Positions 12,832-51,500 of a stretch of 64,000 bases of DNA are shown here, one piece after another. Origin of the DNA: Euprymna scolopes. Taxonomy: Eukaryota. The notes beneath the pieces are model-generated. The model had not been told where the DNA came from. It did no database searches and saw only the letters and a program-made list of their open reading frames with translations. The position numbers were made by a program, and so were the translations under genes. Every line of letters begins with the position of its first letter. Position 1 is the stretch's first letter. The stretch lies in assembly GCA_053919585.1 (NCBI GenBank), contig CM132792.1. The stretch is one strand, 5' to 3'.

Positions 12832-13238
12832 TTGAACACCCCCTCCCAGGAGGGGGACCTTCGTGGCCTTTTGGCCAAGATCAAAGCGTAGTATCTGTTC
12901 CGGTAGATACTGTAAGTAACGACCATATGTGGGAGCAACCCCACATATAAGACCTTGGTCAATGTAGGGGCAACCCTTCATATCAATTGTCACTATCCGG
13001 GGGAGTTGGCCCCCATTTCCCCTTCATTCCTCAGATTAAAAAATCGACCTTGTTCCTAATTTACTCGGTGGGGGAGCAAATAAATACCAACCCCACATAC
13101 CAGTGTGCAAATCACTATCGAGCTTCCATTTCCCACCTCTCGAATGCTGGTCCTTTTTCCCTTCACTCTCCTCCCCTCTCTCCACATTAAAAAACGACCT
13201 TGCCTAATTTGCTCAGTTGGGAAGCAAATAAATACAAT
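12832..13238 (+). mobile_element. Insertion with a U2 snRNA-derived head (SINEU-like or chimeric retrocopy) flanked by a 15-bp direct repeat
   Basis: ATCCATTCCCTATCT at 12817-12831 and 13239-13253. U2-like segment starts at 12857; the element ends in a hairpin plus AATAAA. Confidence 0.7.
12857..13014 (+). ncRNA. U2 snRNA-derived sequence (variant or pseudogene; no canonical Sm site)
   Basis: CTTCGTGGCCTTTTGGCCAAGATCAAAGCGTAGTATCTGTTC matches the U2 5' end (stem I and the GUAGUA branch-point recognition sequence at 12888). It is followed by hairpins at the IIa/IIb/III positions and a loop-IV-like ATTGTCACTA. Confidence 0.75.
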
Positions 13239-13250
13239 ATCCATTCCCTA

Positions 13251-13317
<67 letters not shown>

Positions 13318-14420
13318 ACACGGATATTGCTAGAGTTGCATCTTTATTTTGTTACTTAGTCCATCGCCTCCTATTCAGATGAGAAGGAGTAGACTTCGAA
13401 TATCTGGCATAAAGAGTTTTGATAACCTCTACGCCCTGTATTTTATCGTCTTGTTTAAAATGGATGACTAAATCTATATGCAGCATTATATATTTTTCTA
13501 TATTCAATATAGTTTCTCTTGTATTCAAGCTCCACCTGGATGTCGTTGTTTTTAAATATTTTATTTAAAGAAATATTATATACATCTGGGATCCTTTTTA
13601 TATACCTATACACAACAGACGATTTAAAGTTATATCTCCTATATTTTATACTACCCTAATGGGTAGAGCGTTTTTTTTAAATTAAATTTCTATGATTATC
13701 GAATGTATGCATTCGTACTTAATAGTTAGATCTCTGTTTCACTTATTGACAATGCAAGGCTCTAAGAAAGCACCCTTGTTATGGACGTGCACCAAAAGGA
13801 GAGAAATATAATTTTATTATAAGTGGAACAGCTCGATATTAACTGATGCTTTCTGCACGTTTACGAGGCCGGTGTCAGCAAAGTTAGGAGAGGAGTTCAT
13901 CGTATGACACTAAGACTGGTAATCACAATATAGAAAAATATATTTTCGAGTACCAAATTTCACTCGTCTTGATTGCACTGGGTCCGTTTTCCTATGCCCT
14001 TAAACGATTAACTTTTGAATGTAAAATGAGCAGGCCTTTTAAAATAGTGCATTTGAGCGCATGCTAAAATATAACCAGCAGCAAAGGTTGGTTAGATCAC
14101 GAAAGGATTAGCAACGACAATAGCTGAAAAAAAGCGCATATTCAAATAAAGAAGTGTCCGTGAGAAGAAAAATAGAAAAAAAAGGAAAACAATGCACCAC
14201 GTGATCGGGAGAAGCAAAGTACCCGTGGTCAGCAAGTGGTTGGATGAAGTAGAAACGCTACCAGACTAGATGGACATGTGCAGAGAATGACTATTTAAAT
14301 GCTGTCGAGAGGGGAGAGTAGCGATAATATGAATGTATTTTTAAAAATGTCGACACGGATTTTTATTTCTTTACTTCTTTTGTAACTGCAACGTTACAGT
14401 CTCACTTTTGTCACAGCCGT

Positions 14421-14476
<56 letters not shown>

Positions 14477-14639
14477 ATTGAATCACGATAAATTTGACAT
14501 ATCCTTCATAGCTTAAACGGGGAGTAACTCCCATAGATCAAATAAATAAGCTTACTTTGAAAATAAATTAATCACGACATACATTAATTTTTAAATAAAT
14601 TAAACAAATTAACTGAAGATAAGGGTTAATATGAAGTTC

Positions 14640-16430
14640 ATACTAGCTTTTTAACTTTATATTTGTAAGAAATTCCAAGAGTTCTCCGCAAACTAAGCAT
14701 GTGAAATGTGTTCAGTTTCTGTTCTTTGTGGCTGTAGAGTGTCCATGCTTTGCTGTGATACAGATGGATGTTGGTGACACTGGCCTCCGAGATGATAAGG
14801 TGTTTATTTTCCCACATCATAATTGTCAATTAAACAAGAGTTGTGGGTGCCTTCACAATGGGCTTATTGAGTTCTACATCGAGAGATATGTTTTCTGAAG
14901 ATATTGGAATTGATTGATTACATATAAGCACTGTCGAATTATACTGATGCTGCAAGATATGGCTCGTGACGTGGATTAAGATGAGGCTGCATTCTTTGCA
15001 AACGGTGAAATACCTTCGCAGAATTTTGGTCAATAATAGCAACTTGTCGGACCTTTGGTTTGGATCGAGTGCGGTTGATGCTGAAGAGACGGGCTCCGAT
15101 CTGGAACGATGCTAAAGTCCGTTTTCTAAAGAATTTAATGCATGTATCAGGAGAAGTACAAAGAAAATGTCAAATAATGTGGAACCATGCACGTATCCTT
15201 GTAGTGTATTGTATGCGCTTGTTACCATACGTCTTTTTACACCTAATTCAGCAAGCTGTCTGTATCGAATTCCTCGGTGTAAATCATATAGTCGTGACAT
15301 AACGCTATAAGGCTCAGGAGCTTGGGAGGGCAACCAATGAGAGGCAGTATCTTAAATAGTCCATCTCCACTGACTGGGTGGAATGGCATAGTGAGATCAA
15401 TGAAGACAACGTAGAATGATCCGTTTTACACTTCTCCTGCAGCTGGCATACTAAGAAGATAATGTTAATTGGGTGCGACAACCACACTGTGATTTATGGT
15501 ATATTCTCTTAGCACAAACCTGCAGTTTCGCTAGATGCGGGAAGCCATTTGCCAACGGTGTTTAGTAGCGATGCACCCCTATAATTATTAATTGTGTATA
15601 AGATAACTATTTTTGCATTTATCATATTCTCAGGGACAGCGCGTTCTTCCCAACAACGTGACAAGACTGTGTATTATGATTTTAGGGGAAGAGACTTGCA
15701 ACTCTTGATAATGTAACCTGCGATGGAATCAGTAATCGTTTTTTTTTTCGATGTAAGTTTGCCAATCGCCTAGAAAACATCTTCGATGGTTGTTGGTATG
15801 TCAACCGCAAGTAATTTTTCGTAGTGTGGGATCGTATGAAAGGCGATCTGGCTTACGTTTTTATTCTATTGAATAAGTAGTTCTCCACACATCTGTAAAG
15901 TTGTTGACAGAATTTCTCCTATCTTGGAATCTATGCGAGCGGCATTTAACGCACTTGAACCGGTTGCTTTCATAAAGCTGTCATGCATTACTTTTATATT
16001 TCCAGTTTCTGCAGTTTTTTGTTGGATGGAGTTGCATTGTTTGTTCTAGTACTCATTTTACACATGCAGGGATTGATAGCCTTAACCGAGATGTTCAAAG
16101 GGTTATTAGCGAGTCTTTACTTGGATTAATCTTGTATTTCTGAAGAACCATCTTGTGTTCTAGTTTCTTAGAGTTCGTATCGTATATACTGTTTGTTCAC
16201 CCTTTATTCTCTCAAAGGTTGAGATTACAGCAGCATGTGCGATCTTTCTTCAGATCTTTTTTGGAATTTCTATAGCTGAGCCGTCTGAGTGAATACAGAA
16301 AGGGAAACAAGTCCTATAAAATTTAGAAGTGTATCCACGCAAGCAGGTCAGAGCGGTACTTTCCACAGTCTCTACCAGCTGCTGCAGTAAATGCTGTCCT
16401 AGACATACTGGTCTCACTATCCATCCGAAG
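14640..16430 (-). mobile_element. Decayed RTE-clade (BovB-like) LINE, RT region
   Basis: Minus-strand fragments QLQEKC, VFIDLT..F..VS.DGLFKILPLIGCPPKLLSLI and WTLYSHKEQKLNTFHMLSLRRTLGI. Confidence 0.85.
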
Positions 16431-16537
16431 TACACCTCTGAAATCGATGAAAGTAGAGAGAAAGAGAGAGAGAGATTTGTGCTTTGGCATATCAACATAT
16501 CTCTACCAATGCTGAGGCTTGCACTTTGAAGGGACAA

Positions 16538-16852
16538 TGTAGTACTTACCAACAAAACAAACACCCACGTGTGTGTGCCTTGTATAGGCATGCGCGACAA
16601 CAAAACTTGGGTTTTCATAAGCGTAAGTCTCGAGGTTGTCAGGAATCTACAGGCGCGTGCACAAGAGAAGGGATTGAGATAGTGGAATAAAAGGCAGGTC
16701 GAGTGAGAAGGTTGTTGTTGTTGTCATTGGACGTTACAGTGATGCGTGCGTTAGCAGGTGATTAAGAGGCTGGTCTTTTTTTGTGTGTCAAGTCGCGCAC
16801 CTCGGTGGAGATCATATAAGTCGTGCACCTCGGTGAAGGTGAAGGTCATAAA
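16538..16852 (+). repeat. 5' LTR
   Basis: Starts TGTAGTAC; roughly 93% identical to 19881-20196 by manual count; has a ~28-bp tandem duplication near its 3' end. Confidence 0.95.
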
Positions 16853-16862
16853 CTATTTCGGC
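16853..16862 (+). promoter_or_regulatory. Non-canonical primer-binding site, complementary to tRNA-Phe nt 1-10
   Basis: CTATTTCGGC directly after the LTR is the reverse complement of GCCGAAATAG. Confidence 0.6.
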
Positions 16863-16893
16863 TATTTCGTTTTGTCTCTTTTCCTGGACAACT

Positions 16894-17323
16894 ATGGCTG
16901 GGGCAAAGTTTGATTTAAAACTGATACCCGAATTCAACGGATCCACTTCTGTTGTCGACTGGGTCGAAAGGGTTGAGCTGACCTGCAACCTCTGTGAAGT
17001 AAAGGGGGTGCATACCGTGATTCCCCTGAGATTGGCTGGAGGCACCCTAAGTGTATATCAGCAACTTAGTGCCGTGGAGAAGGCTGATATTACCTGTATA
17101 AAAAATGCTTTATACAAGGCATTTGCCATGGATCCCTGCACGGCCTACGAAACATTTGCCTCTAGGAAGCTCATGCCAGGTGAAACCGTGGACGTCTTCT
17201 TCGCGGAGCTGAAGAAACTTGCAGTTCTATTTGGCAATGGAGTGTCAGAGCAAACACTGGCGTATGCGTTTGTGGCCGGCCTTCCCACCCGTGTTAAGCA
17301 ACTGTTGAGGGCTTCCACGATGT
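16894..17323 (+). pseudogene. gag: Gag (capsid region), C-terminally truncated
   Basis: MAGAKFDLKLIPEFNG..IPLRLAGG..ETVDVFFAELKKLA..FVAGLP..LLRAS; homologous to the gag at 48235. Confidence 0.85.
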
Positions 17324-19883
17324 TTGGAAACCCCAGTGTGTGCTGCAGTTCACATTGATCGGCCTGATTTTAAGGTGGACTACGACCCTCACCAAAAAGC
17401 ATGGACTGCATCGTGGAAGTGGACAGAAGGAAGGGCGCCAACCGAACTCAAGAATAGCATTGCAGAGTACTCGGTACCCGACAAGGCCCGTAATGAATAC
17501 GAGAAGGAACTTGATGCATGGATCCAGGATGGATGGCTGATCCCCTACCCCAACAAGCTGGGACCACCCAAGGGTCTGATTCCCTTAATGGCGGTAGTCC
17601 AGTATAACAAATCAAAAGTTCGTCCGGTGCTGGACTATCGTGAACTCAATAGATACATTGAGACGTACACTGCCGATGCTGACGTGTGCGCCAGCAAGCT
17701 GAGAGAATGGCGCCAGAAGGGCTCCAATGTGTCTATAGTAGACTTGCGGAAGGCTTATTTGCCGGTGCGAGTGGATGAGACATTGTGGCCGTTCCAGACA
17801 GTGTGGTTCCGGGGTCAGAGATACTGCCTTACTCGACTTGGCTTTGGGCTGAATGTGGCACCGCAAATCATGAAGACCATCGTAAATGCAGTGTTGTCCC
17901 AGGAAAAGACCACTGAGGACGCAACATCGGAATATATTGACGATGTGTACGTCAAGAAAGACGTACAATCTGCGTCGCACGTCAGAGAAGAGTTAGCTCA
18001 ATTCGGGTTGGAGTGCAAGGGTCCCGAACGTCTGAGGGATGGAGCACGGGTATTAGTATTGGACGTTTGCGGGAAAGACGGTACCTTACGATGGAGGCGT
18101 GGCAGTGAGTGATGTTATTACGCGGCGGACTATTTTTTCCTTGTGTGGGAAACTTATTGGTCACTTACCAGCGTGTGGCTGGCTTCGAGCAGCTGTGGGC
18201 GTCATCAAACGCAGGGCAAGTTTAGTAACTACAGGTTGGGATTATGTATCTGATGATGCTCTTCTAAATCTGATGACGACAGACACCCTAGAGAGAGTTA
18301 ACAAGGAGGACCCTGCCCGTGGAGAATGGTGTGTCGATGGGGACACTGTGAATGTTTGGGTTGACGCTAGTTGGGAGTGTTATTGGAGCAACGTGGAAAT
18401 GTAATTAAAGACGCGTGCTGGCTGCGACCCGTGAATTATGCTCAACACATCAATCTGGCGGAACTGGATGCTGTTATGAAGGGTTTAAATATGGCACTGC
18501 AATGGCAGTCAAAGAAGTTACACTTGTACACGGATTCTCTCTGCGTCTACCACTGGGTGTCCGACACTCTTTCGGGACGAACGAGAGTCCGCACTTAGGC
18601 AGACAGTGAGATGTTAATTCGGCGGAGGCTAAACACCCTGAAGAGTCTGGTATCAGAGTATGACCTGTCAGTGAGTGTAACGCTCGTGGCATCACACTGT
18701 AATCGTGCAGACCAACTAACCCGTGTGCCTCACAAATGGTATGAAGCTGTGAAGACAGGCGTGGAGTTCGCTGCTCGATCTTGCGCAGTTGGCGCGATTA
18801 GCTCATGCCAAATACAAAGAATTCATGTGCAGAGTGGATATCCAGGTATCAAAAGAACTTTGTATTTTGCGAGGCGTGTGGACCCGGCAGTGACAAGGGC
18901 GGATGTCAGGCAGATCATCACGCACTGTGAGGCATGCCAGTCTATCGATCCTGCACCTGAGCAATGGCAGAAGGGGCGATTGGAAGTTGAGCATGTGTGG
19001 CAACGATTAGCGATGGATATTACCCATTACAGTGGTAAGCCCTTTCTAACCCTTATCGACTGTGGACCTACTCGTTTTGCGGTGTGGCGGCAAATGACCA
19101 GGCAGGACTCGGCGAATGTTGTCCGCCAACTGTCATCTATCTTTTCTGGGCGAGGTGCGCCGGAAGAGATATTGACGGACAACGATGCTGTTTTTTGTAG
19201 CCACCAAGTTCGGCAGTTGTTGAATGAGTGGGGTGTCCGACTACGACTGCGATGTGCTCATGTGACATCAGGGAATGGCATTGCTGAGAGGAGCCATCGT
19301 AGCATCAAGAGAATTGCTGCCAGACAGCAATGCACCGTTACGGAGGCCACGTATTGGTATAACATCACACCAAAGGATGGGAAGACACTAACAACAGCAC
19401 CGGCCAATGCCATACACAAATACCGTGTTAGGATAAAGGGCATTGACACTGTCAAACCAATCGACGAGGACAGTCATGACAAATACAAGGTAGGGGATCC
19501 AGTTTGGGTTAGAACCCCTGGAAACCGGTGCACCGCCAAGTTCAAGCGAGGACGAATATCTGGAGTGGTCAGCCAGCAGTCGGTCATTGTTGATGGAACC
19601 CCATGTGCGCGATCTTCGCCCAGCTAGTGAAGTACATCCCACAACTACAGAGAGCGATGAATCATCAAATAATGACCTGCTGATGAGTGAGGTCACCGAG
19701 CAAGAGAGTGGTAGTTGTAGTTCGTCTGATCAGGCAGGATCAGAAACAGAACCAGAACCACACCCAGAACCAGAACCAGAACCTGAATCCGAGATTCTAA
19801 ATACCACCCTTCGCAGAAGCCAACGAACTAAGAGGCCACCTCCGGAGTGCACTCTATGTGATCATCAGATCAGGGGGGAGTGT
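17324..19883 (+). pseudogene. pol: Pol (RT, RNase H, integrase) with frameshifts and stops
   Basis: RT: RPVLDYRELN, VDLRKAY, LGFGLNVAP, YIDD. RNase H: WVDAS, INLAELDA, YTDS. Integrase: H..YPG..CEAC, MDITH, TDND, NGIAER. Confidence 0.95.
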
Positions 19884-20196
19884 AGTACTTACAAACAAAA
19901 CAAACGCCAACGTGTTTGTGTCTTGTATAGTCATGCGCGACAACAAAACTTGGGTTTTTATAAGCGGAAGTCTCGAGGTTGTCAGGAATCTACAGGCGCA
20001 TGCGCAAGAGAAGGGATTGAGATAGTACTATAAAAGGCAGGTCGAGTGAGAAGGTTGTTGTTGTTGTCATTGGACGTTACAGTGACGAGCGCGTTAGCAG
20101 GTGATTAAGAGGCTGTTTTTTTGTGTGTGTGTCAAGTCGCGCACCTCGGTGAAGATCATATAAGTCGTGCACCTCTGTGAAGGTGAAGGTCATACA
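19881..20196 (+). repeat. 3' LTR
   Basis: TGT...ATACA following the PPT; TATAAAAG at ~20029. Confidence 0.95.
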
Positions 20197-20219
20197 CAAT
20201 TCTAACTACACATCGTCGA

Positions 20220-20613
20220 TCTAATCCTATGAATTGAAGTTGCCGATTATAAGCCCAAAGCTAAATATGCGTGGAACTGGGCGGCGGCAGTCGTTCCTGA
20301 CGATAAAAGGGGTTTCTTAGCCTTCATCGGACAGCTACCTCCTCTGAGTTCTCAGCAAGGAAGATATTGTTCTGGCACTGATCAGCTGCTTCGTGGAGTC
20401 CATGGGGCATTAGATCTCTTCTAAAAATTTGACGAAAACCGATGCCTCGAACAATATAACACAACTCAAAAAGAAACCAGCACTAAAGTACGGGTGTTGG
20501 ATAGTCTCCACTAACACGCATAAAACTGCTGTCCTCAACAAAGTATTATTGCACCCAGAGATTGCATTGCCGCCCTGCAAGAAATACGTTGGCACTGACA
20601 ATGAAGATCTTGC

Positions 20614-20615
<2 letters not shown>
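20220..20615 (+). mobile_element. RTE LINE 5' region and start of AP endonuclease
   Basis: KKKPALKYGCWIVST..KTAVLN, then IAALQEIRW in a shifted frame. Confidence 0.7.
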
Positions 20616-20693
<78 letters not shown>

Positions 20694-21446
20694 TTTTGAT
20701 AGGATAAATGTTATTTACAAAGGCGCCAGTAAAGAAATATTTTTACTGTAGATGCGTTTAAATATTTCAGACAACAAATATTCGTTAAACATTCTAAGGG
20801 GTTGCATTTTATTAACTCGACGTTTTCCGACTCAATTTGTAGACATATGTTTAAAATACCTTATTTTTATTTTTTGAAATGTTGTGTGCAGCCATTTTCA
20901 AATCAATATCCTCACGATTCTCTCATCAATTACGAACATCACAAATTGATACAACATTCAATAACATGAGGCACAAGAAAGCGCCGGTTAATGACTTTCT
21001 TGATCAACCAGTCATGTGCGTCGAACAGTTTTTATTTCATAGTCGTTTAACTATGAGCATACATAGATCCGAGATTAAAACGTTTCATTTACTCTGGGAA
21101 TTTCATTTCATATCACAACACAAATATTGACAGTGATGATTCTTTTACAGATATGAATATTCTGATGACTGTTTCCTCTTATATGAGTGAATAAAGTCAG
21201 CTTAGCATAGTTTGTTCAACGAGTGTGAAATCATGTCTGGCAAATCAAAAATATAGGGATGGCTATCGCGATGAGAACGTTAAATCCATGAAATATCACA
21301 TTTGCTACTGATATAAATATCACTAAATAGTAAACTCATATCATTAAACAGCAATGAAAAAAATAATTAGACTCAGGGGAGATTCTGGCAAAAACTAAAG
21401 TTTATATGAACGAATATTTAGTGGATTATATTTAATTTTCCCCAAT

Positions 21447-21597
21447 TTGTAAAACATCCTAATAGTACGTTGTATTTGTTTTTTTGTAAAGCATCCTAAT
21501 ATAAGTTTCTTTTGTCTTTTTGAAAACCTCCTAATATTAAGTTTATTTATTTTTTTGTTTTTGTAAAGCATCCTAATATTAAGTTTCATTTGTCTTT
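21447..21597. repeat. Minisatellite, ~4 units of 37-45 bp
   Basis: Recurring TTGTAAAGCATCCTAATATTAAGTTT. Confidence 0.85.
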
Positions 21598-22630
21598 CTC
21601 AATAAGGTTTAATTTATTGTTCAATACAAAGTACTCGTTAGTTGATGATAATCCCTTTTTGTACTTTTCTCCAACCAAAAAAAATTATATTACTACTTGG
21701 ACGTAAGAGTTACTTTTAGGAGCATGTCTAACAAGGCTATTATTTGGGATCGTGTAGAACAAAGGAGGAAAGGGAATTGATCACTTAAATGTCTGTTTAT
21801 ATTAAGGGAAACAAAACAGCAAGGAACTTCAAAACCTAGGATAGAAACAATTGGAATAGAAGTCTTCCCGAGATGTAAGGACGTGAACAGCAAAAGAATG
21901 GGATTTTCTATTTGTTGAGTTAATCGTAAGTATGTACCTCGAGAGACGCACATACTTACGAACATATTCAATTTAAGTAATTACAAAATAGATACAGGAA
22001 TGGAACATCGCGGCGATGAGATACAGATTTGGGCTTGATCGATAGTGGGGGACTCATATTTGAGATTATTAATTAGACTCTGTCTAAGAACAAGAGACGA
22101 GTGGTAAATTCACCAGTTCATATATGGCACCAATATCACATGCCTTGGTGAATTGTGGCTCTGTAAAGATATATAATGCTCTTAGGCGTGAGAATATTTC
22201 TAGCTCGATAAAGGAGTCCAACTGAGCGAATATTACATTTATAAAGTGACTTTTCTGAGAACCTATTTACATTTTGTTAGGATTAAAAGGCAAAAAAAAA
22301 CAGCTGTAAAGGGTATGTACGTAAACATACTTAAGATATATTGTTCAACAAGATAAATTTGATTTATTGCGGACTATTATCCTTATCTTTTCTTAGTTGT
22401 TTCACGACGTTTCGGCCAACTATTCCTCTGGCCTTCGTTAGAAAAATAGTCCGCAATAAATAAAATTAATAAATAATATTCATCTCAATAATGAATTCCA
22501 ATTAAATAATATGTTCTATTCCCTACGGACTCGACTATGGAAGATCAGATGATAAATAAACATGAATTTATGAATCCAAAAAATTCAACCTTGATCGCTC
22601 TTTAGCGGCGCAGTTTATAGAGAGATTTCA

Positions 22631-23349
22631 TTTTTTTTTACACAGTGATCACCACTTATCAAGGCCCGGAAGCCACTCAGGGATAAGGGTTATTGCAAGT
22701 GCATTACGTTAGTGTGGAGATTTGATGAAGTGTTTACTTAAGGGGGCGGTTCATTAGGAATTTGTTAACATTGGACTTGAAGACATTCAAGTTGCAGTCC
22801 GGTGGGAAGCAGGCAGACGGAACAGAGTTCCACAGGCGTACAGTTCTAAGAAAGAAGCTTTGTTCATGGAATCTTTTTTTTTTGACAGTGGATTCGGCTA
22901 GACGGGTGTTTTTCGTGAAAGATTGGCGAGGGGGGACCAGAGATTGGAGTTCAGACGAGCACCTGCCATGGAAATAACGATAAAACAAGGATAGGCTCGC
23001 AACGTCTCTTCTGTGGGAGAGAGGTTGCAGGGTAGAGAAAAGGGCATCCCCCACTAAGCCACGAAGTGTATTTTGTACTCTGTCAAGGCAGGATTGGCTG
23101 TTTTTTGCAGCTCCTGCCCAGATATGGCAACAGTATTCAATCCTTGGACGTACTGGCTTTTATATAGATAGAGAATTGCATCAGTATTGAGATATCTTCT
23201 GAAGCGGTAGAAGGATCCCACCATCTTTCCAGCGACCTTGGCAACAGACTTGATGTACGTGTTCCATTTCAGATCAGGAGTAAAGGTCAAACCCAGAAGC
23301 TTGTCAAAACACGGGGCCTCACCCAGACGAGAGCCATCCATCACAATTG
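22631..23349 (-). mobile_element. CR1-like LINE 3' part (family A)
   Basis: ORFs KLLGLTFTPDLKWNTYI..LYLYKSQ and LQPLSHRRDVASLSLFYRYFHG..WNSVP; poly(A) appears as a T run at 22631. Confidence 0.95.
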
Positions 23350-23514
23350 GCTCGGTTCCAAGCGAACATTGTCTGAAGATAGCGGTTTCAATCCTACCCA
23401 AGGCCGACCAGAGGCTTACTTGGCCAAAACGTGGTGAGCGAAACCAACTGCGGAAGGCAGTAATTGCCGTGGATGCAGTCAGGAGATTCAGAGTTCCTAT
23501 CCCGTCGCGGTTAC

Positions 23515-23555
23515 CACCTGACGAAGCCAGAGGAATAGTTGGCCGAAACTTCGTG
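23515..23555 (+). ncRNA. Minimal hammerhead motif (cleavage-triplet G mutated)
   Basis: cac-CTGACGA-AGCCAG(aggaatag)TTGGCC-GAAAC-TTC-gtg; the inverted copy keeps GAAAC-GTC. Confidence 0.65.
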
Positions 23556-25265
23556 AAACAACTAAGAAAAGATGAGGATAATAGTCCAGAATAAAAAATA
23601 AAATTAATAAATAAAACTCATCTCAATAATGAATTCCAACTAAAAAATAAGATGAAACCTATATCAGTAGACGCCGATAGAACAAGTATTTCTGGTCATT
23701 TAAAGCCGGGAAAAGTGGACAAATCAGGATTTTTAAACGGTTATTCGTAACAATTGTTTGATTGTAGTAATAATTTCTATGTGTATCATTTCCTCGCGAA
23801 CCTGTATAATATTAATGTACGAATTATGTTTGGTTATGTTGGCGGAAATGGGTGCACGATTCAACGTTGGTAACAATTTTTTAATCTGCATAAATATCTT
23901 TTTTTCTACACAGCAACTAAATTATTTATGGCATTTAACTAAATCGATTTAACACTTATATGTTCTCAACACTAATCTTAGAATCAAGGCTTTTCTACTC
24001 TCAATCTATAAAGTTATATCCTAATCTTCCCAAAACAAGCTATTTAATGTTTTAATGTTACACCTGAGATGGTAAACAAGGTTTGATCCCTAAGTTGCTT
24101 ACGGTCCCATATCCGAGAGAGGATATAAACTCTTTTATGTTAAAACTTATGATGAATAACACACAGGCTTTCATATATAAGCATTTGCATATTTATGATA
24201 GACAGAAGAGTTTCGATAGTCAGTCGCTTCTGAAAAGACTTATACTGAGGAAATATGTATCTGGTGTTAAGTTAATGCATAGTGAATTTTAATTTTATTC
24301 ACACTTTATACACATATGCCCACAGAAGAGTCATTTGGTAACATTGTAATGTTATGTCGACTTCAGAAAACGAAGTAAGTAAAACACTGAATTCTTCTTA
24401 TTGCCGTAATCTCAATCTGTGCGTTTATCTCATCATTGCGTTAATGAATTGCAGTATCGAAACTGCCGGAAATCATTTACTCGTTGCTAAAGACTACTGG
24501 CTGGGTCAGTTAAGCCTTTTCTTTTTTGGTTCTATTTAACAACGATTATTAATTTTATAAGGGTAATTATTAATTTTTTCTCAGCCACATGTGAGATTTA
24601 GTAGTCTAAATAATTGGAATCTGGGAAACATTTGGAATCAGATATCTGCTTATGTACATTTAAATGGTGAATTGCCTTAATATTGCGTTATTATTCCTTT
24701 ACTAGTCAATGAACATTTATATCCCATTTCTTAGCGGGGTACCATTGTTTTTGTTTGTTGTCATAATTAAAACCCATGAATTTATTTTATTGCAAATAAA
24801 AACGTATGGGAGTTTCTAAATAACTTCAAGAATACTATCAGTGTGTCAGGAAATTCTCTGTTGTATCTTTTCTCATAAAATTTACATAATCTTAGATAGC
24901 CCAGTAAATACGCCGGTGTGATTACATTTATGAAAACATACCGAGTGTTATTCAAGGGTCTTAATGACTTAATTTATGGTTTAAAAATTTAGGACATCGT
25001 ATTATTTATATTACAAATTCTTGGTTGGTAAAAATAACCTGTTATTATTCGAGGTAATATCATTCTAATAAATGTCCCCTTAAGCTCCCGTTTAAAATAA
25101 ACTTCTAGTAGACGAAATATATATCTAGTAAAGAAATGCTTTGATAAAATATATGTGGCGACTATTGAATTCGATTATGTAGATTTGCTATTTTCGGTGT
25201 TCAACGTGACAGCAAGTATAGTTTATAGTCTCTGGGCAAATAATTTTATTGTTCAAATATGCATA

Positions 25266-25341
<76 letters not shown>

Positions 25342-25974
25342 GTGCATTTGCACCAATGTATGCATTTTATGTGCGGTTGTGTATGTCATCAGTTTTATCA
25401 TTATGGTAGTTTTATCATGATAGTATTTTCTATTTTTTTTTAACCTTTCAAAATTTATTTTGTCTGTTCAATTTTTTCTTTATATATTTCAAATATCGAA
25501 TTATTTCTATTCTTCCTTTTAGTGGGATTAATCACATTTTACTTTGACAGAAAAAAAAACGTGCCGGTATCTTTTACTTTGGCGAATTAAGTCTGGAGCG
25601 GAACGCATAGAATTGTGTATTTGCAATGTTTGAAGAAACGATAAAATATTCTTGCTTTTAATAAAAAAAATCGAGATGTCTTGAGGATCAAACTGATATG
25701 AATTGAAAGAACACAAACGGAGCTCATCGCCCAAGATCTATAATAAATATCAATGTGCATTTATTAATATATAATTATATATATTTCACCCAGTTACGCA
25801 AAAGTTAGCGATTAAAATAATTCCCTTTTCTAGGCGGATGAAAGTTATTACAAATAGGGCTAGGATGTGAGAAAATGTGTATAAATTTATAACAATACCT
25901 GAAAATTGCCTTACAGCCTGAACAGGCAAAGTCAGGAGCCTGACTAACACACACACACACACACACACACACAG

Positions 25975-26023
<49 letters not shown>

Positions 26024-26215
26024 CTTTTTAGAATGTTAACAGTCACATTTGGCCGCTACAAACAGTCATCTGTTTTAGTCAATTAGATTTCGTCAGGCGC
26101 CGCTGGCCCTCCGAATAAATAATTAAAAATATTTTGCTCCTGTTCAGTTGACTACCTCATTGAGTTCATTAGTTCCTACTTTTGAATAACGCAAGCCTGT
26201 ATATATATATATATA

Positions 26216-27800
26216 CTAGCAGTTCCGCCCGGCTTTCCGTGGACCCTATATACTGTTCCTAACTTTATGTGCGTATGTACGGTAATGATTTTCTATAAAA
26301 AAGGCTTTCTTAACTACCGTAGAGAAAAGTTGGTAGAGACCGCAAGCGTAATTGTTTTTTTAAATTGGACCCCGATTTTGAACCCTTAACATTTATTGTT
26401 TTGGGTTCGAATTGAATTCCCATGATTGATACATGTCCAAGTAACCGACATAAAGAATTTCAAGTGTTCAGACCCAAAATTGGTGGAGGAGTTTGGTAGA
26501 GTTTGCAAAGGTCAACTCTGTAAACTTTGACCTCTTGCAAGACAAATATTCACCCAAAACATGACTAAAAGTTTGCTGCATCTCTGAACATCCTTTATGT
26601 AAAATTTAACATGTTTAGTCCCAGAATTGGCTTAATAGTTTGTATGAGACCGCAATGGTAATACCTCTTTAACTTTGACCCCTTGAAAGACAAATTTTAA
26701 GCAAAATCACGATTAAAAAGCTTAATACATTTATGTAAAATTTCAAATGTTTAGACCAAAAATTTGCTGAGTAAATTGGTAAAGACCGCAGACGTAATTT
26801 TTTTAAAACTTTGACCCACATTATGACCCTTTAACATTTATTATTTTGGGCAAAAATCAAAGTATAAAGTTCGATCCATACCAAGTAACCTATATCTAAA
26901 ATTTAAAGTGTTTAGACCTAAAATTACCGGAGGAGTCTGAAAGGTCAAATCGTTAAACTTTGACGCCTTAACAGGCAAATTCTGATCGAAAACTTATTAA
27001 AATTTCCCCCCAAATCTCAATATCTCTTATGTTAAATCTGGAGTCTGTAGACTGAAAATTGACAAAATTATTTGGTAGGGAATATATATATAATCGTCTA
27101 TGTGTATCAGACTGTACCCAAATAGGCTCCTAAAAACCTACCATATACGTTGATAGAGGATTGCAGTTTCAATCTGGATCTGAAATGGGCATGATTATCA
27201 CCCTCCACTCACTGGGTCGGGTGCCTAGGGAAAAGCCATATACACTCTCACATAGTTTTATGTAGGTATACCAAATTTGGTCAGATTAATCGCCATAGTT
27301 CAGATAAAATTTTCGATGGGTTACACCATTAACTTCCTTAAACGTGAGTGGGGCGTTAGGAAGGGTCACTTCTAATTGGAAACCATGTGCACACTCACAC
27401 AGTTTATTTTACACCCGTAAAGCTAAAAAATATGTAAGGATTATACACCATGGGGTGGGGGAGATTTTTATACGTACCACCAGTCACCCTCGCTAATGGG
27501 TTGAGGATCCTAAGTGTGTCACTTATAAATGGGAACCCTATGCACGCTAACATCACTCGATATAGATCTGCCGAACTACAATGGGGAAGAGGTATTTATG
27601 TGTTACAACTCACACCGACGTAGCTGCGATCCCATTGGGGTCACCTATAATAGGAAACTCTAATTATTGTTTATACGTTTGCGTCAATAACACTCTTACT
27701 ACTGTACCCTTGTGTTCTTTTGTAGGGGGTTACTATGGTTTTGATACCCCAAATGTTTTATACTTTCATAAATCAGAGTTTAGTTTTTGAAAAACACTTT
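26216..27800 (-). mobile_element. Non-autonomous Helitron-like element with internal tandem subrepeats
   Basis: Minus-strand 3' end has hairpin CCACGGAAAGCCGGG then CTAG|T at 26216. About five 140-165-bp units (TTGGTAGAGACCGCA..CTTTGACC..AAATTT..TGTTTAGACC) lie in 26330-27080. Distal boundary uncertain. Confidence 0.65.
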
Positions 27801-29978: not shown

Positions 29979-31000
29979 TATCAAGTTGACAAGAAAGTTA
30001 TTGCGGTTTTTATCTTTTAAATCCAGATGAACATATCTCGGCTTAAGCAAAAATCTAGTTGAGATTAATTAGCTAAAAGTTTTTTTTTTTATATTGCTTT
30101 TATTTTTTAAGCATTTCTCACGCAGAATATTGTCGAGACTCTTAAAAAGTGGGAGTCGGTAGTTCAGAAGTCGAGAGATTATGGAGGATGAGACAGAGTT
30201 TTGTGACCGTTGTGCACATCTGCATGGTCGGTTTGGAAATGTGTGGAGGAGACTTAGGTTTTTTAGTTGACTAATGCCGGGTGTTGTTGTGGAAATTTTT
30301 GATGCATTTTGTCTATTTGTTGAGAGTACTTTAATGCCGTAATTGTTTCACCTGTATTCAAAATATAATAATGGTTAAGACATGTTTCAGACCATAAAAC
30401 AGTCAACATCAACTTTTCTTACTGCAATTCTGGCTCCAGTAAGAGTTGTTTAGTTTCGTCTGCATCTAACCTAAGAGCTGTGTCGCCAGATGTCGTAAAA
30501 AAGAAACACTTTTCATCGCAAATCAGAATTTCACTTAGAAACGGTCGTTTCTTTTGCGTAAAAGAAAGGAAAATGAGATTTAATAACGGCGTTCATTTGG
30601 TTGTCATTCAATTTGTTAGGCACTTATTTATCAAGTTTTTGTCCATCAAATCACTCTCAAGCGGTAGCATAGTGGGTTACGTTACGTCTAATTAAGAGGC
30701 AAGTTCTCGAACAGTTATGCGTGGATCTGCTTCCACCAAAGCTTTTACTTAATCGTTGTCACCACGATTGGCGACCTATAGGTTCATCATCTTCAGGACT
30801 CTCGTTGCCACCAGGAAATGTCTTACAATTCTATTGTACTGTGCGTTCAGTAGTGGTTCCTGAACCAAACGCTTCGTTTATATCGCGAGCTATTTCAGCA
30901 AATTTTTAATCAACCAATATCTTCCATGCAACATACAATAAAAACGCAAAAGGATGCTGTAATAATTGTAATAACTAAGAATATATAATTAAAACAATAG
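29979..31000 (-). mobile_element. Decayed mariner transposon
   Basis: TA followed by TIR-like TCAAGTTGACAAGAAAGTTATTGCGGTTTT; minus-strand AEIARDINEAFGSGTT.ERT and KKLDK*VPNKLNDNQ. Confidence 0.8.
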
Positions 31001-51184: not shown

Positions 51185-51500
51185 TTTTTTATATGCTAAA
51201 TCGATCGATGCTTCGGTCCAGTCTCGAAAGACAAAGGATACCCCTGTAGGGCCAGTTGCGCGTGTAATTGTGAGGCAAGGCTCGTGCAATCTCTAACCAC
51301 ACCTCTCCTGAATCGATACTGTTTCGGCCAGTGGCAAGGAGAAGACCAGGACGACTAGAAACAATGCCGAGATAAGTGGGGAGCACATACAGCACTGGGA
51401 AGTCCCAAATGGTGACCCATTTAGTACTGGCCAGGTTCAACGTTGCTTAACTTCGTTGATCCAGCGGAAACGGGTGTGTAAACGTGATTATGCCGTATAC
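51185..51500 (-). mobile_element. SINE3: 5S rRNA head, ~190-nt body, A tail
   Basis: Minus strand GTATACGGCATAATCACG..GATCAACGAAGTTAAGCAACG..AGTACTAAATGGGTCACC..TGGGA..GTGCTGTA, then an unrelated body ending TATAAAAAA. Confidence 0.85.

What the first reader, a model, noticed from the sequence alone, without database searches (positions are those of the whole stretch)
16851..16869. LTR retrotransposon PBS complementary to the extreme 5' end of tRNA-Phe rather than a tRNA 3' CCA end
Seen: no TGG follows the 5' LTR. Instead CTATTTCGGC (16853-16862) abuts it, followed by a partial duplicate GCTATTTCG. Known: metazoan tRNA-Phe(GAA) begins GCCGAAAUAGCU, so this is a 10/10 complement of nt 1-10. 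The match runs beyond the 7-bp acceptor stem (CTA pairs with U8-A9-G10), so it is not merely a sense copy of the tRNA 3' arm. Non-canonical priming modes I know are anticodon-region tRNAiMet halves (copia, Ty5) and cis self-priming from the transcript's first 11 nt (Tf1). Inference: this family may prime from a 10-12 nt 5' tRNA fragment, either pre-formed or released by the element's RNase H in a trans version of the Tf1 reaction. I do not recall this being described but cannot check the literature.
Basis: partly seen in the sequence, partly recalled or inferred. Interest (0 to 1): 0.9.

Follow-up and report, generated by a model that had tools for sequence, protein, structure and literature searches.

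The report
Retroelement primed from tRNA 5′ end
A degraded jumping gene in this mollusc-type genome, and its relatives in barnacles, crabs, prawns and a whipworm, carry a 12-base site where DNA copying must start that pairs with the first 12 bases of a transfer RNA instead of its tail, which suggests a way of starting reverse transcription that I could not find described.

Summary
The window holds an old copy of a compact LTR retroelement with an internal deletion (5′ LTR 16538-16850, 3′ LTR 19881-20194). Directly after the 5′ LTR lies AACTATTTCGGC (16851-16862). In 25 of 30 sister copies it reads AGCTATTTCGGC, a 12/12 complement of nt 1-12 of the host tRNA-Phe(GAA), which ARAGORN confirmed.

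The same 12-mer sits at the same place in a second family of this genome (Pol 60% identical, LTR unrelated), in two barnacle families and in three environmental relatives. Two decapod elements carry AGCTATCTAGGC and a Trichuris element AGCTATCGAGGC. Both variants complement 5′ ends of real tRNA-Phe(GAA) genes. A second crab family carries AGCTATCCGGGC, the complement of nt 1-12 of a tRNA-Lys3-type sequence.

No LTR contains a complement of its own site, so Tf1-type self-priming is excluded. No canonical TGG site exists, and some leaders are only 12-17 nt long.

Most likely reading: the minus-strand primer is the 5′-terminal 12 nt of a tRNA, released by a cut after nt 12. The priming itself is inferred, not shown. 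Six full-text searches on priming found no description. Two earlier notes of this scan reached the same reading on other pieces of this genome.

The parts
16533..16537 (.). 5′ target-site duplication GACAA
   Evidence: Matches CACAA at 20195-20199 in 4 of 5 positions. Related young insertions have exact 5-bp duplications.
16538..16850 (+). 5′ LTR (313 bp, TGTAG...GGTCATA)
   Evidence: Direct repeat with 19881-20194 at 92-93% identity. The end is fixed by 3′ LTR/flank junctions.
16851..16862 (+). Primer-binding site, AACTATTTCGGC here and AGCTATTTCGGC in 25 of 30 sister copies; complement of tRNA-Phe nt 1-12
   Evidence: The same 12-mer or host-type variants sit at the same junction in 10 other lineages.
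16861..16869 (+). Second copy of GCTATTTCG (tandem 9-mer with 16852-16860), specific to this family
   Evidence: Absent from family 2 and from all other lineages.
16894..17358 (+). gag remnant; the C-terminal zinc knuckles and the protease are lost in a deletion of about 645 bp
   Evidence: ORF list. Intact-length copies encode a 250-aa Gag with two CCHC knuckles. The deletion was mapped against L047.
17324..19627 (+). pol remnant in several frames: RT (RVT_1), DUF7047, RNase H (RVT_3/RNase_H), integrase (Integrase_H2C2, rve)
19873..19880 (+). Polypurine tract GGGGGGAG
   Evidence: The same tract precedes the 3′ LTR in family 2 and in most crustacean relatives.
19881..20194 (+). 3′ LTR
20195..20199 (.). 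3′ target-site duplication CACAA

Best explanation
The 12 bases directly after the 5′ LTR are the element's minus-strand primer-binding site. They pair with the 5′-terminal 12 nt of host tRNA-Phe: the 5′ strand of the acceptor stem, then U8, A9, and G10-U12 of the D stem. To prime, the tRNA must be cut between nt 12 and 13, so that U12 offers a 3′-OH next to the last U5 base. RT then copies U5 and R. Later the plus strand copies the 12-nt RNA and runs off its 5′ end, which fixes the site at exactly 12 nt without needing a modified base as a stop. I favour cleavage of the annealed tRNA by the element's own RNase H, a trans form of the Tf1 reaction, which uses the first 11 nt of an RNA. Shown: the position, the complementarity, conservation across deep divergence, host-type variants, and the lack of any other candidate site. 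Inferred: that priming occurs from this duplex, that the primer is exactly 12 nt, and which nuclease cuts.
For: The 12/12 complement abuts U5 in 25 of 30 family copies. The host tRNA-Phe(GAA) starts GCCGAAATAGCT. The same site sits directly after the LTR in family 2 (Pol 60% identical), in two Amphibalanus families and in environmental relative L183. L184 and L185 carry it upstream of gag, but their LTR boundary was not verified. None of the 9 LTRs compared show blastn similarity, and Pol tree branches are 0.4-1 changes per site. The differences between sites lie only at the positions opposite tRNA nt 4-6: AGCTATCTAGGC in two decapods, AGCTATCGAGGC in Trichuris, and AGCTATCCGGGC in a second crab family of the same genome. 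GCCTAGATAGCT and GCCTCGATAGCT are 5′ ends of real tRNA-Phe(GAA) genes, in 37 of 42 and 40 of 44 hits. GCCCGGATAGCT is the 5′ end of human tRNA-Lys3 (PMC8715211). For the TAG variant, the tRNA genes found have TCTGGGC as the 3′ strand, so the site TCTAGGC is antisense to the 5′ strand and not a sense copy of the 3′ arm. Leaders are as short as 12 nt (Trichuris) or 15-17 nt (decapods), which leaves no room for another site. Complementarity stops exactly at tRNA nt 1 on one side and at the LTR edge on the other. The PPT (CAGGGGGGAG in most lineages) is the only other conserved non-coding motif. The duplexes are stable, at -18.7 to -23.5 kcal/mol.
Against: No molecule has been observed: no strong-stop DNA, no 12-nt fragment, no cleavage assay. 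A 12-nt 5′ tRNA fragment is shorter than the known classes of 5′ fragments (my own knowledge). The tRNA sets of the decapods, the barnacle and Trichuris were not examined, so the link between variant and host rests on tRNA genes from unassigned metagenome contigs and on human tRNA-Lys3. The metagenome pattern included the Phe-type D arm, which biases the hits towards tRNA-Phe. Family 1 LTRs end in TA, not CA. Older subscription literature, such as the first Cigr-1 paper, could not be searched.
Confidence: 0.62

Rival explanations
1. The site and the tRNA are the same, but the primer is a pre-formed 5′ tRNA fragment made by a host nuclease and then packaged, rather than cut from the annealed tRNA by the element's RNase H.
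For: copia uses a pre-cut 5′ fragment of tRNAiMet (established knowledge). tRNA-Phe genes are hugely amplified in this host, with 767 matches. All the sequence evidence for the main explanation applies here equally.
Against: The known 5′ fragment classes are 14 nt or longer (my own knowledge). The same exact 12-nt end would have to be made for tRNA-Phe and for a tRNA-Lys-type RNA in hosts from four phyla. An enzyme carried by the element explains that more simply.
Confidence: 0.2
2. The 12-mer binds the tRNA 5′ end for another purpose, such as tRNA or genome packaging, an annealing anchor, or a target of host silencing. Minus-strand synthesis is primed in another way.
For: Retroelements make extra contacts with their primer tRNA outside the primer site, for example the bipartite site of Ty3 (established knowledge).
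Against: The site sits at exactly the U5 edge with no spacer in every lineage whose LTR end could be fixed. No canonical site or other conserved motif lies between the LTR and gag, and the Trichuris leader is only the 12-mer. No second stretch complementary to the tRNA is shared between families.
Confidence: 0.08
3. The primer is a different RNA with the same sequence, such as a tRNA-derived SINE transcript, a pre-tRNA, or the element's own transcript (Tf1-type self-priming).
For: Self-priming is known from fungi to vertebrates (PMC4600332). The length of 11-12 nt fits it.
Against: No LTR holds the primer-sense 12-mer even with 3 mismatches, nor any exact stretch of 6 nt or more. The transcript start suggested by RNA contigs reads TCAGTGAAACGC. 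A SINE with a matching 5′ end would be needed in every host, including one matching the Lys-type site. Pre-tRNA leaders differ between gene copies, yet complementarity stops at nt 1.
Confidence: 0.07
4. The match is a chance resemblance without function.
For: Conservation within one young family would mean nothing on its own, because the copies decay neutrally.
Against: The chance is about 6e-8 per element at a fixed position, and the pattern was seen in 11 lineages with unrelated flanking sequence.
Confidence: 0.01

Closest known systems
Tf1/Tf2 (S. pombe), Tj1 and the sushi group: self-primed reverse transcription
   Same: The primer site is short (11 nt against 12 nt) and abuts U5. The primer is the 5′-terminal stretch of an RNA, so a cut must create the 3′-OH. 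The plus strand can run off the primer's 5′ end. In Tf1 the element's own RNase H makes the cut (established knowledge; overview in PMC4600332).
   Different: Here the partner is a host tRNA acting in trans, not the element's own transcript, since no complement exists in the LTR. The Pol lineage is different, and its RNase H is of the RVT_3/RNase_H type.
copia, 1731 and Ty5 (hemivirus-type): priming by a 5′ fragment of tRNAiMet cut in the anticodon loop
   Same: The primer is a 5′ fragment of a tRNA made by an endonucleolytic cut, not the CCA end.
   Different: There the site pairs with the anticodon stem-loop (about nt 25-39) of tRNAiMet, and the element has integrase before RT. Here it pairs with nt 1-12 of tRNA-Phe or a tRNA-Lys type, the cut would lie in the D stem, and the gene order is RT-RH-IN.
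Canonical retroviral, Ty3 and Ty1 primer sites
   Same: The site lies directly after U5. It is complementary to an abundant host tRNA, and the tRNA used differs between families.
   Different: Canonical sites start with TGG and pair with the 3′-terminal 8-18 nt including CCA. Here there is no TGG and the opposite end of the tRNA is used.
Cigr-1 clade of Ty3/Gypsy (Ciona; reported in molluscs, PMC6238403)
   Same: A compact gag-pol LTR element of about 4.2-4.5 kb, abundant in some mollusc genomes. This is a lead from memory and from PMC6238403.
   Different: Membership was not tested because no reference sequence was available. Pfam finds RVT_1-DUF7047-RVT_3-rve and none of the Gypsy RT_RNaseH domains. 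A Pol profile hits retroviral IN and RT best.

Membership tests
LTR retroelement with RT-RH-IN order | Two direct LTRs, a 5-bp target-site duplication, and a polypurine tract before the 3′ LTR | tested here: met
   Exact duplications in relatives.
LTR retroelement with RT-RH-IN order | gag with CCHC knuckles, protease, RT, RNase H and integrase | tested here: met
   The window copy lacks about 645 bp.
Canonical tRNA 3′-end priming | TGG followed by the complement of a tRNA 3′ end, within a few nt of U5 | tested here: not met
   No TGG at the junction. Leaders of 12-17 nt in Trichuris and the decapods hold only the 12-mer.
Tf1/sushi self-priming | Primer site complementary to the first ~11 nt of the element's own transcript | tested here: not met
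   No complement in any LTR, even allowing 3 mismatches. The apparent transcript start is unrelated.
Tf1/sushi self-priming | Primer released by the element's RNase H | not testable with these tools
   Needs biochemistry.
copia/Ty5 half-tRNA priming | Site complementary to the anticodon stem-loop of tRNAiMet | tested here: not met
   Complementarity is to nt 1-12 of tRNA-Phe. tRNAiMet itself was not compared.
copia/Ty5 half-tRNA priming | Integrase upstream of RT (Pseudoviridae gene order) | tested here: not met
   The order is RT, RNase H, integrase.
BEL/Pao | Pfam Peptidase_A17, DUF1758/DUF1759, DUF5641 | tested here: not met
   None of these were found.
Ty3/Gypsy (possibly the Cigr-1 clade) | Gypsy-type RNase H (Pfam RT_RNaseH / RT_RNaseH_2) | tested here: not met
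   Only RVT_3/RNase_H and DUF7047 were found.
Ty3/Gypsy (possibly the Cigr-1 clade) | RT phylogeny placing it with reference elements | not tested

The most novel reading that the evidence does not exclude
A whole lineage of retrovirus-like elements, spread across animal phyla, starts reverse transcription from the first 12 nt of a host tRNA (Phe, and in one family a Lys3 type). The element's own RNase H cuts the fragment off the annealed tRNA, which would be a trans form of Tf1 self-priming. The site follows the host's tRNA sequence and can switch between tRNAs while keeping the rule of 12 nt from the 5′ end.
Probability: 0.35. Interest if true: 0.9.

Novelty: new variant of a known kind. Interest (0 to 1): 0.8.

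Why it matters
Three ways of starting minus-strand synthesis are textbook for LTR retroelements: the tRNA 3′ end, a half tRNAiMet, and self-priming. A fourth, using the extreme 5′ end of a tRNA, would bridge the last two. It would also show that measuring about 11-12 nt from an RNA 5′ end is a more general solution than thought.

Primer-site finders look for tRNA 3′ ends and so miss this lineage, which has at least 5,481 junctions in this genome alone. The work on small RNAs that silence retroelements found here centres on 3′ tRNA fragments. For this lineage, the 5′ fragments would be the ones that compete with the primer for the site.

The prediction is directly testable with one enzyme, one tRNA and a short RNA.

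Tried and rejected
- **Tf1-type cis self-priming.** No complement of the site exists in any LTR.
- **A second shared tRNA contact.** Only chance 8-mers turned up. A 12-nt match in the L183 LTR comes from a palindromic T-arm/B-box-like GGTTCGAACC motif and is not shared.
- **The near-match at 30888-30899 in the window.** It has no LTR context and is at chance level.
- **Tying the Phe variants to their hosts.** No tRNA genes lie in the fetched decapod, barnacle or nematode loci. The metagenome contigs that carry the tRNA variants hold no Pol relatives. No paper prints these 5′ ends.
- **Trichinella locus L186.** No LTR pair or 12-mer could be recognised, so it is undetermined.
- **The Lys3-type 5′ end in this genome.** It was not found. 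Only the Lys-CUU type GCCCGGCTAGCT is present, in 92 copies.
- **Other searches.** Relatives in IMG/VR: none. Single-sequence PDB search with the RT: nothing.
- **RNA runs.** They are held only as contigs, so the starts and ends of molecules could not be read.

Full report
**What is in the window.** A direct repeat pair marks an LTR element: 5′ LTR 16538-16850 and 3′ LTR 19881-20194, at 92-93% identity. A polypurine tract GGGGGGAG (19873-19880) precedes the 3′ LTR. The flanks GACAA and CACAA form a decayed 5-bp target-site duplication.

The interior encodes a gag remnant, RT (RVT_1), DUF7047, RNase H (RVT_3/RNase_H) and integrase. Sister copies of about 4.33 kb have a 250-aa Gag with two CCHC knuckles and a protease. 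The window copy lacks about 645 bp of gag and protease. It is an old, broken copy.

**The observation.** The LTR end is fixed by the 3′ LTR/flank junctions in the window and in L010, L024 and L027. It ends ...GGTCATA at 16850. The next 12 bases are AACTATTTCGGC. In 25 of 30 sister copies they read AGCTATTTCGGC. GCTATTTCG is repeated in tandem in this family only.

The genome has 767 matches to the tRNA-Phe 5′ 25-mer. ARAGORN calls these genes tRNA-Phe(GAA), and they begin GCCGAAATAGCT.

**Conservation beyond the family.** This is the key test, because copies of one family share the motif by descent. I looked at twelve lineages, and the junction or the leader could be read in eleven.
- A second family in the same genome (L053-L058) has Pol 60% identical to family 1 and a 428-bp LTR with no similarity to it. 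It shows exact 5-bp duplications, and some LTR pairs are identical. AGCTATTTCGGC follows directly after ...CTTACA, and unrelated sequence comes next.
- Two Amphibalanus families have the same 12-mer directly after their LTR.
- Three environmental relatives carry it. L183 has it directly after the LTR. In L184 and L185 it lies upstream of gag, but the LTR boundary was not verified.
- Macrobrachium and one Petrolisthes family have AGCTATCTAGGC.
- A Trichuris suis element has AGCTATCGAGGC, followed at once by the gag ATG.
- A second Petrolisthes family, from the same assembly, has identical LTRs, the duplication CCGCG and the site AGCTATCCGGGC.
- The Trichinella locus was unreadable.

None of the nine LTRs compared resemble each other. 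Pol tree branches are 0.4-1 changes per site. Apart from the polypurine tract, this 12-mer is the only conserved non-coding element. In this genome, CA plus the 12-mer occurs 5,481 times against 1 for the reversed control.

**Do the variants track tRNAs?** The sites differ only at the positions opposite tRNA nt 4-6, which lie in the acceptor stem.
- A metagenome scan found both GCCTAGATAGCT... and GCCTCGATAGCT... as 5′ ends of genes that ARAGORN calls tRNA-Phe(GAA), in 37 of 42 and 40 of 44 hits. The pattern included the Phe-type D arm, and the contigs are not assigned to hosts.
- In the TAG-type genes the 3′ acceptor strand is TCTGGGC, with a G·U pair. The element's TCTAGGC is therefore antisense to the 5′ strand, not a sense copy of the 3′ arm.
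- GCCCGGATAGCT is the 5′ end of human tRNA-Lys3 (PMC8715211). The crab's own tRNA was not checked.

Two young families in one crab genome with different 12-mers argue for two different tRNA partners under one rule: 12 nt from the 5′ end.

**Alternatives tested.**
- No LTR contains the primer-sense 12-mer, even with 3 mismatches, nor any exact stretch of 6 nt or more.
- Contigs from poly(A) RNA runs cover family 2. They stop about 63 nt before the 5′ LTR's end and about 33 nt before the 3′ LTR's end. That suggests a short R beginning TCAGTGAAACGC, which is unrelated to the site. Contigs are weak evidence for ends.
- No canonical TGG site exists, and some leaders are only 12-17 nt long.
- No second tRNA-complementary stretch is shared.

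**Mechanism (inferred).** A primer must have its 3′-OH paired next to the last U5 base. With this duplex, that base is U12 of the tRNA, so the tRNA must be cut between nt 12 and 13.

The closest precedents are two. In Tf1, the first 11 nt of the element's own mRNA are annealed and then cut by the element's RNase H. In copia and Ty5, the primer is a 5′ fragment of tRNAiMet cut in the anticodon loop. Both are established knowledge, and PMC4600332 gives the overview of self-priming.

A 5′-terminal primer also lets plus-strand strong-stop synthesis end by run-off, which fits complementarity stopping exactly at nt 1. The duplexes are predicted at -18.7 to -23.5 kcal/mol.

The site may track the host tRNA either by copying of the primer or by selection. 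Retroviruses copy the primer, whereas Ty1 and Ty3 inherit the site (PMC7472051).

**Classification.** Pfam gives RVT_1-DUF7047-RVT_3-rve, with no BEL/Pao or Gypsy RNase H domains. A profile of 16 Pol proteins hits retroviral integrases (MMTV) and RTs (HIV, foamy virus) best. Relatives at about 50% identity occur in Trichuris, Trichinella, decapods and barnacles. It may be what repeat libraries call Gypsy-Cigr, but that comes from memory plus PMC6238403 and was not tested.

**Literature and earlier notes.** Six full-text searches on priming and tRNA fragments found no description of a primer site for a tRNA 5′ end. The papers read from those searches did not describe one either. Old subscription papers were not searchable. 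Two earlier notes of this scan (s1-244830, s1-241393) reached the same reading on other pieces of this genome. I re-derived their points independently.

**Verdict.** The priming chemistry is untested.

Noticed in passing
window 51384-51500 (-): Full-length 5S rRNA match (Rfam RF00001, 50.6 bits, above the gathering score).
   Followed up: no
G000 C28:101.70-101.72 Mb and C18:100.09-105.52 Mb; L040: tRNA-Phe genes are massively amplified in tandem arrays with periods of about 219 bp and 335 bp. There are 767 matches to the 5′ 25-mer. Within one array some copies carry anticodon AAA instead of GAA.
   Followed up: partly
G000 C18:104.18-104.36 Mb: A tandem array (period about 498 bp) of 92 genes beginning GCCCGGCTAGCTCAGTCGGTAGAGCAT, which is tRNA-Lys(CUU)-like. 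The exact Lys3-type 5′ end GCCCGGATAGCT... was not found in this genome.
   Followed up: no
window 16848-16850 and 20192-20194: Family 1 LTRs end in ...ATA, not the usual ...ACA, giving termini TG...TA. Family 2 and all relatives except L185, whose LTR boundary is unverified, end in CA.
   Followed up: partly
L183:155-200: The LTR of an environmental relative holds a palindromic, tRNA T-arm/B-box-like motif (GTGGTTCGAACCCGGGA). It is not seen in other families.
   Followed up: partly
L056:1128/5674: Contigs from RNA libraries join the two flanks and skip exactly 4,545 bases with a 5-base overlap. This is an empty site: the insertion is either polymorphic or lies in a repeated flank.
   Followed up: no
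L059:1826-2139 and 6445-6759: In Macrobrachium, the element together with about 313 bp of flank appears duplicated as a unit.
   Followed up: no
L188:871-2131 and 6587-9054: The barnacle element, whose LTRs are identical, is inserted into a long satellite array with a period of about 135 bp.
   Followed up: no
window 30888-30899 (+): AGCTATTTCAGC, a one-mismatch copy of the 12-mer with no LTR nearby. It is judged to be chance.
   Followed up: yes
window 10530-26070: Many long (AT)n microsatellites lie in this stretch, and an 88-nt repeat pair sits at 26594-26681 and 26730-26817 (74% identity).
   Followed up: no
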